A stretch of DNA of 64,000 nucleotides from Octopus sinensis (taxonomy: Eukaryota). The number at the start of each line of letters is the position of its first letter. The first letter of the stretch is position 1. Below the pieces are notes generated by a model. That model was not told where the DNA came from. It saw nothing but the letters and a program-made list of their open reading frames with translations, and did no database searches. Both the position numbers and the translations under genes were made by a program. Below are positions 23,275 through 23,901 of this stretch, piece by piece. The stretch lies in assembly GCF_006345805.1 (NCBI RefSeq), contig NC_043000.1:131874001-131938000 (forward strand), given 5' to 3'.

Positions 23275-23394
23275 ATGCTTACAGCACCTAGGGTTCCCAA
23301 GCGGTCACCCATCTAAGTACTAACTAGGCTCGATGTTGCTTAACTTCGGTGATCAGACGAGAACCGGTGCTTTCAACGTGATATGGCCGTAAGC
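23275..23394 (-). rRNA. RNA5S: 5S rRNA gene (copy 9; U40; array-type upstream spacer)
   Basis: Full 5S core. Confidence 0.97.
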
Positions 23395-23781
23395 ATCAAA
23401 GTGGTTAATTTTAATATATTTATTCTATAAACTGATAAATAAACTTCTTATTTTAGAATAAGTTGATCCTCATTAAAATATATATTTTTTTACATTCCTT
23501 GACAACAGTTTATTTAACATATATTACATTTCATTTTCATTTTTCTTACCGAGTCCTCAACTAGAGATTAACGACGTGAGATGTGAGGTGTTTTCTGGTA
23601 CAGATCAACGTGTAAGGAACGTAGTTGCCTAACTTGCTGCTGTATAATGTGTTTTAGGTAACTAAAAACTCAAATGACCGTTACAATGAGAAGGAAAATT
23701 TCATAAGCCGTAAAAAGACGAAGTTAAATCAGGCAGAGTTTCGGTAGTAGTAAAAAAAAAACAACAAAAAAACAAAAGGTA

Positions 23782-23901
23782 ATGCTTACAGCACCTAGGG
23801 TTCCCAAGCGGTCACCCATCTAAGTACTAACTAGGCTCGATGTTGCTTAACTTCGGTGATCGGACGAGAACCGGTGCTTTCAACGTGATATGGCCGTAAG
23901 C
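23782..23901 (-). rRNA. RNA5S: 5S rRNA gene (copy 10; 507 bp from copy 9, head-to-tail)
   Basis: Full 5S core. Confidence 0.97.

What the first reader, a model, noticed from the sequence alone, without database searches (positions are those of the whole stretch)
23275..23901. The tandem-array unit is a deletion derivative of a head-to-head pair, with older versions preserved
Seen: the array spacer is colinear with the first ~350 bp of the divergent spacer 13278-13628. At TTCGGTAGTAGTA, where normal spacers continue ~200 bp to the + gene (e.g. 24345-24563), it is fused to the A-tract terminator of the next - gene. The same junction occurs at copy 1 (1822-1942, which retains the 8-nt ATAGGAAA lost in the array) and in the 507-bp doublet of copies 9-10 (lacking U39). 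Inference: deleting the + gene converted an inverted module into a direct unit that then amplified; the window records seed, doublet and array stages.
Basis: partly seen in the sequence, partly recalled or inferred. Interest (0 to 1): 0.72.

Follow-up and report, generated by a model that had tools for sequence, protein, structure and literature searches.

The report
Origin of an octopus 5S array
In an Octopus sinensis 5S ribosomal RNA gene cluster, the 0.5-kb tandem repeat unit is a shortened version of the spacer found between head-to-head 5S gene pairs, fused to a terminator; this is an ordinary example of repeat-family evolution, and the two-gene "intermediate" looks like a recent spin-off of the array rather than its ancestor.

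Summary
The window (Octopus sinensis CM016862.1, about 131.87-131.94 Mb) holds 69 5S rRNA genes. Thirteen are dispersed, mostly as head-to-head (HH) pairs. Fifty-six form a minus-strand tandem array of about 498 bp period. The sequence facts hold. The array spacer is colinear (about 80-85% identity) with the first 350 bp of HH spacers 5-6 and 8-7. It ends at GGTAGTAGTA, where six non-tandem copies continue into a conserved block towards the partner gene. In tandem units it abuts the A-tract terminator of the next gene instead. The same junction occurs beside copy 1, beside copy 10 and at the array's left edge. So the tandem unit is very probably a derived fusion made once, but a deletion and a 0.5-kb duplication cannot be told apart here. 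The "seed, doublet, array" series is only partly supported. Copy 1 is an old junction-bearing copy (17% diverged). The doublet differs from the array by about 1%. An inverted paralogous four-gene module has a single gene (copy 4) where the doublet sits. That gene's two flanks match the doublet's outer flanks. The doublet is therefore best read as one array-type unit recently placed into a solo gene. The 8-nt difference is more likely a gain in copy 1. No sister species could be checked.

The parts
23276..23394 (-). 5S rRNA gene copy 9, left member of the doublet. It has C39 and T40 and is identical to copy 1. Its 3' flank is the ordinary 'type A' flank, like copy 4's.
   Evidence: Rfam 112.3 bits; sequences; flank comparison 92.3% to copy 4
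23395..23752 (.). Doublet spacer. This is the array-type long-side part of a family-I head-to-head spacer and ends in TTCGGTAGTAGTA (23740-23752).
   Evidence: 99% identity to an array unit; 2 substitutions against the main-array consensus; colinear with 13278-13627
23753..23782 (-). Junction partner: the A-tract, which is the T-run Pol III terminator of copy 10. It is the long form, TTACCTTTTGTTTTTTTGTTGTTTTTTTTTT, identical to several array units.
23783..23901 (-). 5S rRNA gene copy 10, right member of the doublet (C39, C40)
   Evidence: Rfam 113.7 bits
23902..23944 (.). 43-bp proximal upstream element of copy 10. It is array-like (2 differences from the array, 8 from copy 4). The array-like tract ends here.
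   Evidence: 43-bp element strings
23945..24563 (.). Family-II head-to-head spacer between copies 10 and 11. TTCGGTAGTAGTA at 24344 is uninterrupted and continues for about 207 bp to the + gene. This spacer is the paralogue of spacer 12162-12772.
   Evidence: 93.9% to the copy 4 side
24564..24682 (+). 5S gene copy 11, head-to-head partner of copy 10
12816..12934 (+). 5S gene copy 4. It is the solo paralogue of the doublet: its 3' flank matches copy 9's and its upstream matches copy 10's.
13159..13947 (.). Family-I head-to-head module: copy 5 (-, 13159-13277), spacer 13278-13828 and copy 6 (+, 13829-13947). The first 350 bp of the spacer are colinear with the array spacer.
22006..22828 (.). Second family-I module in the inverted sense: copy 7 (-), spacer 22125-22709 and copy 8 (+). 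Copy 8's upstream is colinear with the array spacer.
   Evidence: 88% over 438 bp
1730..1940 (.). Old junction-type 3' flank of copy 1. It holds the distal spacer segment (clear from 1805), then GGTAGTAGTA, then the A-tract. It is 17% diverged from the array and truncated on the left.
1941..2059 (-). 5S gene copy 1. It is a short-side gene of a head-to-head pair with copy 2 (7648-7766). The pair is split by a transposon.
35816..36004 (.). Left edge of the array: a partial spacer (unit positions about 319-493) plus the junction
   Evidence: 98.9% to the array unit
36005..57522 (-). Main tandem array, 44 genes, all U39. Units are 479-507 bp and within-array distance is 0.19%.
58085..63650 (-). 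Right sub-array beyond the 100-N gap. It has 12 genes with U39, mostly also C17U, a period of 495 bp, and is 2.8% from the main array.

Best explanation
This is the 5S rDNA cluster of Octopus sinensis.

Architecture shown here. The older arrangement in the window is a string of head-to-head (HH) 5S gene pairs. Each pair has a 0.55-0.75 kb spacer with a long side (about 350 bp) and a short side (about 200 bp).

Origin of the tandem unit (inferred). One illegitimate, essentially blunt recombination event joined the end of the long side of a family-I spacer (...GGTAGTAGTA) to the distal end of the T-run terminator of a same-strand 5S gene. I lean to the deletion form of this event, which removes the short side, the + gene and the tail-to-tail spacer. 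A 0.5-kb tandem duplication gives the same product.

What the unit contains. It keeps terminator, gene, the conserved 43-bp upstream element with a TATA-like box at about -35 to -23, and 300 bp of spacer. That is all a Pol III 5S gene is known to need.

Later history (inferred). The unit was amplified and homogenised by unequal exchange into the array. U39 became fixed there.

The other two junction-bearing sites differ in age. Copy 1 is an old relic of the junction lineage. The doublet 9-10 is young. It looks like one array-type unit (spacer plus gene) placed into a formerly solo gene by homologous exchange within the gene or proximal promoter. That could be gene conversion or integration of a one-unit circle. 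Local homogenisation of the two copies followed.
For: Identity and source: 69 5S genes. The window's transposase ORF maps to GCA_006345805.1 CM016862.1, which is O. sinensis.

Colinearity and junction.

The junction is derived:
- The sequence is uninterrupted across the spacer breakpoint in HH5-6, HH8-7, HH10-11, HH4-3, HH12-13 and a relic at 25434. These families are 25-35% diverged from each other.
- The type-A 3' flank is uninterrupted in seven dispersed genes.
- The tandem spacer is closest to family I (14-22% distance), against about 30% or unalignable for the others.

Single origin: copy 1, copy 10, copy 14 and the array share the same breakpoint and the same T4-G-Tn-G-T10 terminator layout.

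Copy 1 is old: 17% from the array over 121 sites, and outside doublet+array in 490/500 bootstraps.

The doublet is secondary:
- 12012-12954 aligns to 24713-23763, 12773-13045 to 23437-23169 and 13040-13997 to 22947-21959, all in the inverted sense.
- Copy 4's gene region therefore matches twice, once at copy 9 and once at copy 10.
- The flanks are 92-94% identical to the paralogue, while the tract 23276-23944 is about 99% identical to the array.
- All other long-side genes (2, 4, 5, 8, 13) are solo.
- The doublet spacer is 2 substitutions from the main-array consensus.
- d(doublet, main) is 0.9%, less than d(main, right sub-array) at 2.8%.

Local homogenisation: both doublet genes share T at -12 and C39.

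Deletions do occur in this cluster: a gene-less 5S relic at 35600-35781 and a gene-less spacer relic at 25405-25520.
Against: - Deletion and duplication are not distinguished. The array's right edge lies outside the window, and its left edge is a secondary breakpoint.
- Polarity rests on clock-like (midpoint) reasoning and parsimony among paralogues. No outgroup species was available.
- Both doublet genes lie inside the array-like tract yet lack U39. The donor must have predated the fixation of U39, or the exchange went from the doublet to the array. U39, and possibly one spacer site, does unite the two sub-arrays against the doublet.
- Copy 1 groups with the array in only 168/500 bootstraps on 120-130 sites. 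The junction itself is the main shared derived character.
- The paralogue argument allows the alternative that copy 4 lost a unit by recombination between two direct genes.
- The sequence is a long-read scaffold with a gap and indel-rich units. The doublet was not checked against reads.
Confidence: 0.55

Rival explanations
1. Deleting the + gene from a head-to-head module made a direct doublet in place. Copy 1 is the seed, copies 9-10 are the surviving doublet stage, and the array was amplified from it.
For: The junction and colinearity are real. Copy 1 is basal. The doublet genes lack U39, which all array genes share, so cladistically the doublet can be sister to the array. Copy 1's layout is what a deletion in an alternating string of modules predicts: distal spacer in forward sense, then terminator, then a short-side gene.
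Against: The doublet spacer is about 1% from the array, while copy 1 is 17% from it. J is the GGTAGTAGTA/A-tract junction; by this measure J is much older than the doublet-array link. The paralogous module has a solo gene whose two flanks are split between copies 9 and 10. An in-situ deletion therefore needs an extra insertion or an extra precise loss. Copy 9 combines a family-I upstream with a type-A 3' flank, unlike the family-I genes 5 and 8. The array's left edge shows none of the doublet's flanks. The 8-nt polarity is not as claimed.
Confidence: 0.15
2. The junction arose by a 0.5-kb tandem duplication of terminator + long-side gene + 350 bp of a family-I module, through unequal illegitimate exchange, with no loss of a + gene. 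Copy 1 and copy 10 acquired the junction-type flank later by exchange within the gene.
For: This produces exactly the observed junction. The unit's terminator (CCTTTTGTT(T)GT8-10) most resembles that of family-I gene 5, TCCCTTTTGTTTGTTTTTTTT. A full 0.5-kb direct repeat is an efficient substrate for amplification. Flank shuffling by exchange within genes is evident at copy 9.
Against: The terminator similarity rests on about 10 low-complexity bases, and copy 8, the paralogue of copy 5, differs. No array-type spacer in the window continues through the junction point into the short side. Both non-array junction bearers (copies 1 and 10) have foreign upstream regions.
Confidence: 0.25
3. The tandem unit is ancestral, as in most animals. 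The head-to-head modules arose when an inverted gene with its flanks was inserted at the junction point.
For: Tandem 5S arrays are the common animal arrangement (general knowledge). An unrooted tree alone cannot exclude a root on the tandem branch. Copy 1 falls outside array+family I in the NJ tree.
Against: All three HH families share the same uninterrupted sequence across the junction point and are 25-35% diverged from each other. Tandem-type copies are at most 17% apart and are nearest to one HH family. The ordinary 3' flank is also shared by seven genes. This model needs the rarer kind of event and a much faster clock in the HH families.
Confidence: 0.07
4. The doublet, or the placement of the array, is an assembly artefact of a long-read scaffold.
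For: There is a 100-N gap at 57733-57832. Units 55-57 next to it are indel-rich. There are many homopolymer length variants.
Against: The doublet has private substitutions (T at -12 in both copies, T40, one spacer site). It also has clean joins to unique paralogue-matching flanks. A collapsed or chimeric join would not produce these.
Confidence: 0.05

Closest known systems
Tandem 5S rDNA arrays evolving by concerted and birth-and-death evolution (e.g. fish, crustaceans, bivalves; PMC3123226, PMC3215682, PMC6204057)
   Same: Head-to-tail units of gene plus non-transcribed spacer. Identity within the array is very high while dispersed paralogues are diverged. Array-specific fixed variants occur (U39). 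Degenerate or orphan copies are present.
   Different: Here the array sits beside dispersed head-to-head pairs, and its spacer can be read as a truncated half of their spacer. The PCR-based studies cited could only see tandem units.
Long-read descriptions of higher-order 5S rDNA organisation (Esox, PMC5437419; Caenorhabditis, PMC8961926)
   Same: Mixtures of long tandem blocks, short tandems, dispersed genes and inverted arrangements. Unit variants are defined by indels. Extrachromosomal circles and recombination are proposed for spreading units.
   Different: In Esox, whole blocks of tandems are inverted. In C. briggsae, the orientation change concerns 5S relative to SL1. Neither describes gene-by-gene head-to-head pairs giving rise to the tandem unit.
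General model of tandem-repeat birth: one illegitimate duplication or deletion creates a direct repeat, then unequal crossing-over amplifies it (Smith-type model; my own knowledge)
   Same: A single blunt junction is shared by all units. Amplification follows, with homogenisation and partial units at the array edge.
   Different: Nothing essential. This is an instance of the model, with the parental sequence still present nearby as paralogues.

Membership tests
5S ribosomal RNA gene (Rfam RF00001) | Full-length match to the covariance model above the gathering score | tested here: met
   69 hits at 82-117 bits against a threshold of 38, all covering model positions 1-120
5S ribosomal RNA gene (Rfam RF00001) | Pol III terminator (T-run) directly after the gene | tested here: met
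   Every copy is followed by a T-rich run of 17-31 nt
5S ribosomal RNA gene (Rfam RF00001) | Transcription and incorporation into ribosomes | not testable with these tools
   No expression data. The conserved 43-bp upstream element with a TATA-like box is only suggestive.
Tandem 5S rDNA array under concerted evolution | Same-strand head-to-tail units at a constant period | tested here: met
   56 minus-strand genes with units of 479-507 bp; TRF period 495 for the right part
Tandem 5S rDNA array under concerted evolution | Units more alike within the array than to paralogues outside, with array-specific fixed variants | tested here: met
   Within the main array 0.19% distance, against 14-15% to HH5/HH8. 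U39 is in all array genes only.
   Six uninterrupted spacer copies and seven ordinary 3' flanks
   The unit sequence is the same under both models. The array's left edge is secondary and its right edge is outside the window.
   About 1% from the array and not separable from it (32/200 bootstraps). The paralogous locus has a solo gene and the doublet's flanks are chimeric.
   Spacer ORFs are not on record. The transposase cluster has one member. The metagenome scan gave 0 hits.

The most novel reading that the evidence does not exclude
The doublet is a newborn mini-array. A single array unit, perhaps a 0.5-kb extrachromosomal circle, integrated by homologous recombination into a solo 5S gene 12 kb from the array. 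The window would then catch how a 5S array seeds new arrays at dispersed genes. Copy 1 would be an ancient example of the same process, or the original deletion site.
Probability: 0.2. Interest if true: 0.5.

Novelty: new member of a known kind. Interest (0 to 1): 0.3.

Why it matters
5S rDNA is usually collapsed or missing in assemblies, and I found no description of cephalopod 5S organisation in the library searched. This window shows head-to-head gene pairs and a tandem array side by side. The array unit can be traced to a truncated pair spacer. That is a concrete, datable example of how a tandem array is born and how its unit spreads to solo genes. It is useful for annotation and for studies of concerted evolution. 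The mechanism (illegitimate junction, unequal exchange, gene conversion) is textbook, and nothing here suggests a new function.

Tried and rejected
- Sister-species test. I tried to reach other octopus assemblies through exact-protein look-ups. Spacer and transposon ORFs of the window are not on record. The one recorded protein, the IS1595-like transposase, has a cluster of one member. A 62-nt degenerate 5S pattern found nothing in the metagenome collection. I did not use the second scan because a looser pattern would hit unrelated eukaryotes.
- Extra degenerate 5S genes. An E-value-threshold Rfam scan of 1-36010 found none beyond the 13 dispersed copies. The miRNA-like hits are (CA)n or hairpin noise.
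- Inversion model, in which the + gene segment flips to give a direct pair. I rejected it as the simple form. Copy 1's upstream continues as a complete inverted spacer rather than into a former 3' flank.
- Terminator comparison to decide between deletion and duplication. The sequences are too short and too low in complexity.
- Phylogeny to place the doublet. Only 1-2 informative characters exist. NJ and character reading disagree, so I treat it as unresolved.
- TRF caps the period at 500 and so missed the main array. Counts come from Rfam coordinates instead.

Full report
WHAT THE WINDOW IS

Rfam finds 69 full-length 5S rRNA genes and no tRNAs. I number them by position.
- Copies 1-13 are dispersed between 1.9 and 26.8 kb, on alternating strands.
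- Copies 14-69 are all on the minus strand from 36005 to 63650, with units of 479-507 bp.
- A 100-N gap lies at 57733-57832.

An IS1595/ISXO2-like transposase ORF of the window (4368-5243, Pfam PF12762) is recorded exactly once in the gene collection. It lies on GCA_006345805.1 CM016862.1 at 131.875 Mb. That assembly is Octopus sinensis. From the offsets, the window is about CM016862.1:131,874,001-131,938,000.

ANATOMY OF THE DISPERSED GENES

Every gene has a conserved 43-bp proximal upstream element. In gene sense it reads TATCAGTTTATAGAATAAATATATTAAAATTTACCACTTTGAT, with a TATA-like box at about -35 to -23. Every gene also has a T-rich terminator.

Genes are arranged head-to-head (HH): 1-2, 3-4, 5-6, 7-8, 10-11 and 12-13. 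Pairwise comparison gives three spacer families.
- Family I: HH5-6 and the reverse complement of HH7-8 (86% identity).
- Family II: HH10-11 and the reverse complement of HH3-4 (88% identity).
- Family III: HH12-13, to which the copy 1 spacer is related (75%).

Each spacer has two sides.
- The long side is about 350 bp or more next to one gene. It ends in a distal segment and the motif TTCGGTAGTAGTA.
- The short side is about 200 bp. It begins TATGAC..AATGATGAGTA..GGTGCGAGTGTT and leads to the partner gene.

The distal segment and the start of the short side are conserved across all three families.

Most 3' flanks are of one type, here called type A: T-run followed by AATTTAAAC.AATTGTAATTTGACCATAAGAAGCATT. 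This type follows copies 3, 4, 6, 7, 9, 12 and 13. Copies 5 and 8 have a second type.

CHECKING THE OBSERVATION

One array unit aligns to three places.
- Copy 5 plus its spacer (13159-13627): 85% over 473 bp, E 4e-149.
- Copy 8 plus its spacer (22828-22392): 88%.
- The doublet (23276-23769): 99%.

The alignment shows the spacers colinear up to TTTCGGTA(G/T)T(A/T)(G/T/C)TA. The HH spacers then continue TATGACG... for about 200 bp to the + gene. The doublet, the array units, the sequence left of copy 14 and the sequence left of copy 1 all continue AAAAAAAAAAC...AAAAGG(T)AA and then the 3' end of a minus-strand gene.

The breakpoint is blunt, with at most one base of microhomology. U39 is present in all 56 array genes and in none of the 13 dispersed genes.

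Given these E-values, chance is not an issue.

IS THE JUNCTION DERIVED?

Both halves of the junction exist as uninterrupted sequence elsewhere.
- The spacer side runs straight through in HH5-6, HH8-7, HH10-11, HH4-3, HH12-13 and a gene-less relic at 25434.
- The terminator side runs into the ordinary type-A flank in seven genes.

The HH families differ from each other by roughly 25-35% in the alignable distal segment. The junction-bearing copies differ by at most 17% and are closest to family I.

With roughly clock-like change, the uninterrupted state is older. The junction then arose once, inside the family-I lineage. This polarity is an inference. An outgroup species is the proper test and none was reachable.

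DELETION OR DUPLICATION?

Two events give the same junction.
- A deletion running from the motif, through the short side, the + gene and the tail-to-tail spacer, to the distal end of the next minus gene's terminator.
- A 0.5-kb tandem duplication of terminator + gene + 350 bp.

After amplification, only the array edges could tell them apart.
- The left edge (35816) is a secondary breakpoint inside the spacer.
- The right edge is outside the window.

Evidence leaning to deletion:
- Copy 1's layout fits what a deletion in an alternating string of modules predicts: distal segment in forward sense, then terminator, then a short-side gene with a complete inverted spacer upstream.
- Other gene-removing deletions are visible in the cluster.

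Evidence leaning to duplication:
- The unit's terminator resembles that of family-I gene 5. This rests on about ten low-complexity bases.

I lean to deletion at roughly 50:30, with the remainder for other routes.

COPY 1

Its flank carries the same junction and the same terminator layout.
- It is 17% from the array and 31% from HH5-6 over about 120 sites.
- It lies outside doublet+array in 490/500 bootstraps.
- It groups with them in only 168/500, so the junction itself is the main shared derived character.

On this evidence copy 1 is an old junction-bearing copy. Whether it is the original site or an old recombinant cannot be said.

Its extra 8 nt are a tandem repeat of AGGAAAAT. The repeat is absent from the array, family I, family II and the 25434 relic. 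It is present, in inverted sense, in copy 1's own upstream spacer. A gain in the copy 1 neighbourhood is more parsimonious than a loss in the array.

THE DOUBLET

Three results argue against it being a preserved intermediate.

First, it is almost identical to the array.
- It has 2 substitutions in 388 bp against the main-array consensus.
- Its distance to the main array is 0.9%. The two sub-arrays differ by 2.8%.
- The NJ tree places it with the main array. The array is monophyletic without the doublet in 32/200 bootstraps.
- Read as characters, only U39 and possibly one spacer site unite the sub-arrays against it. The placement is unresolved.

Second, the segment 12012-13997 (copies 3-6) is an inverted paralogue of 21959-24713 (copies 7-11).
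- The correspondences are 6 with 7, 5 with 8, 3 with 11, and copy 4 with both 9 and 10.
- Copy 4's 3' flank is 92% identical to copy 9's.
- Copy 4's spacer beyond -43 is 94% identical to copy 10's.
- Neither resembles the array.
- The tract 23276-23944 is about 99% identical to the array.
- Relative to its paralogue, the doublet is thus a solo gene plus one array-type unit. The end points lie in the conserved gene or proximal promoter.
- All other long-side genes (2, 4, 5, 8, 13) are solo.

Third, the junction is older than the module duplication. Copy 1 is 17% from the array, while the module flanks differ by 6-8%. The doublet's unit is only 1% from the array. It therefore arrived after the duplication.

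The simplest mechanism is gene conversion from the array, or integration of a one-unit circle by a crossover in the gene. Both are inference. Both doublet copies share T at -12 and lack U39. This suggests either later homogenisation between them or a donor that predated the fixation of U39.

The alternative cannot be excluded. In it, the locus once held - / + / - genes, suffered the deletion in place, and copy 4's locus lost a unit. It needs more events.

COMPARISON WITH WHAT IS KNOWN

Tandem 5S arrays with concerted and birth-and-death evolution are well documented, as are orphan copies, inverted blocks and unit variants. Spreading through circles has been proposed (PMC3123226, PMC3215682, PMC5437419, PMC8961926). 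I found no paper on cephalopod 5S organisation in the library.

This is a new example in a new lineage, with an unusually legible parent-product relationship. It is not a new kind of element.

VERDICT

- The core inference, that the unit is a derived truncation and fusion of a head-to-head spacer, is well supported.
- 'Deletion of the + gene' is plausible but unproven.
- The seed-doublet-array time series is not supported for the doublet.
- The 8-nt polarity is probably reversed.
- Interest is modest.

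Noticed in passing
window 3031-7357: A 4.3-kb DNA transposon sits inside the head-to-head spacer between copies 1 and 2. Its terminal inverted repeats are about 1.3 kb (3031-4338 vs 7357-6024, 93%) and contain internal 290-bp repeats. It carries a 291-aa IS1595/ISXO2-like DDE transposase ORF (4368-5243, Pfam E 3.5e-20). That protein is a singleton cluster in the protein collection.
   Followed up: partly
window 12012-13997 and 21959-24713: Two four-gene 5S modules are inverted paralogues (88-94% identity). 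They lie 8 kb apart. The interval holds a transposon-like element bounded by inverted repeats 14220-14567 / 18210-18559 (92%), with broken ORFs at 14763-17227. The tail-to-tail spacer 8-9 has an extra 222 bp (22948-23168) with short inverted repeats, possibly a MITE.
   Followed up: partly
window 35600-35781: A gene-less 5S locus. A type-A 3' flank and its A-run are fused directly to a diverged upstream promoter element, so the 119-bp gene has been cleanly removed. The 32-bp piece ATCACAATTAGTTTAAATTAAACAAAAAAAA is duplicated in tandem just before it.
   Followed up: partly
window 35806-35832: The array's left boundary falls inside the spacer (unit position about 319). It is marked by a 9-bp fold-back, GTTGATCTG-gca-CAGATCAAC. 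This looks like a hairpin or microhomology repair scar.
   Followed up: no
window 25405-25520: A relic of a head-to-head spacer, with no gene on either side, lies inside the 1.1-kb tail-to-tail spacer between copies 11 and 12. It holds the distal segment, TTCGGTAGTAGTA and the start of the short side. A pair appears to have been lost here.
   Followed up: partly
window array units starting 36503, 37986, 40473, 45968, 49953, 54948, 55939: Seven array units share the same 21-bp deletion, which removes the upstream TATA-like box (TCAGTTTATAGAATAAATATA). They recur every 2-11 units. Four more units (28, 36, 40, 47) have other indels there. If real, roughly a fifth of array genes may lack the upstream promoter element. 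Terminators also come in a short (22-24 nt) and a long (30-31 nt) form.
   Followed up: partly
window 56427-57832 and 58085-63650: Units 55-57 next to the 100-N gap carry several indels, probably from contig-end quality. Beyond the gap the array is a distinct sub-family with period 495 bp. Genes are mostly C17U, and three units (61, 63, 67) share GGTGAACACTT. Within-group distance is 4%. The true array length and the link between the two parts are unknown.
   Followed up: partly
window 24344-24490, 12230-12390, 26010-26170, 22230-22390, 13615-13760, 2160-2290: The block spanning the junction point is conserved across all head-to-head spacer families, far better than the rest of the spacers. 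It reads GGTAGTAGTATATGACG.CAATGATGAGTAAGTGTTGGTGCGAGTGTTTGACTGTTCAGCACTGTGAAG.AGATGAAAGATAATG..ACAGAC...GACGTCATAGATTTTTACCGAAAGATTG. It contains a C-box-like ATGATGA. No Rfam family matched it. Tandem units lack its second half.
   Followed up: partly
window 1941-2059 and 23276-23394: Copies 1 and 9 have identical gene sequences, and both carry U40 at a CpG site (CTCGTCTGATC). This is either parallel CpG decay or a trace of shared junction-lineage ancestry.
   Followed up: no
window 24936-25053, 2720-2775, 31961-32028: (CA)n/(TG)n microsatellites give sub-threshold miRNA-family hits (mir-297, mir-3149) in the E-value Rfam scan. A 100-nt perfect hairpin at 1479-1577 gives a MIR158-like hit and is probably a MITE.
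   Followed up: no
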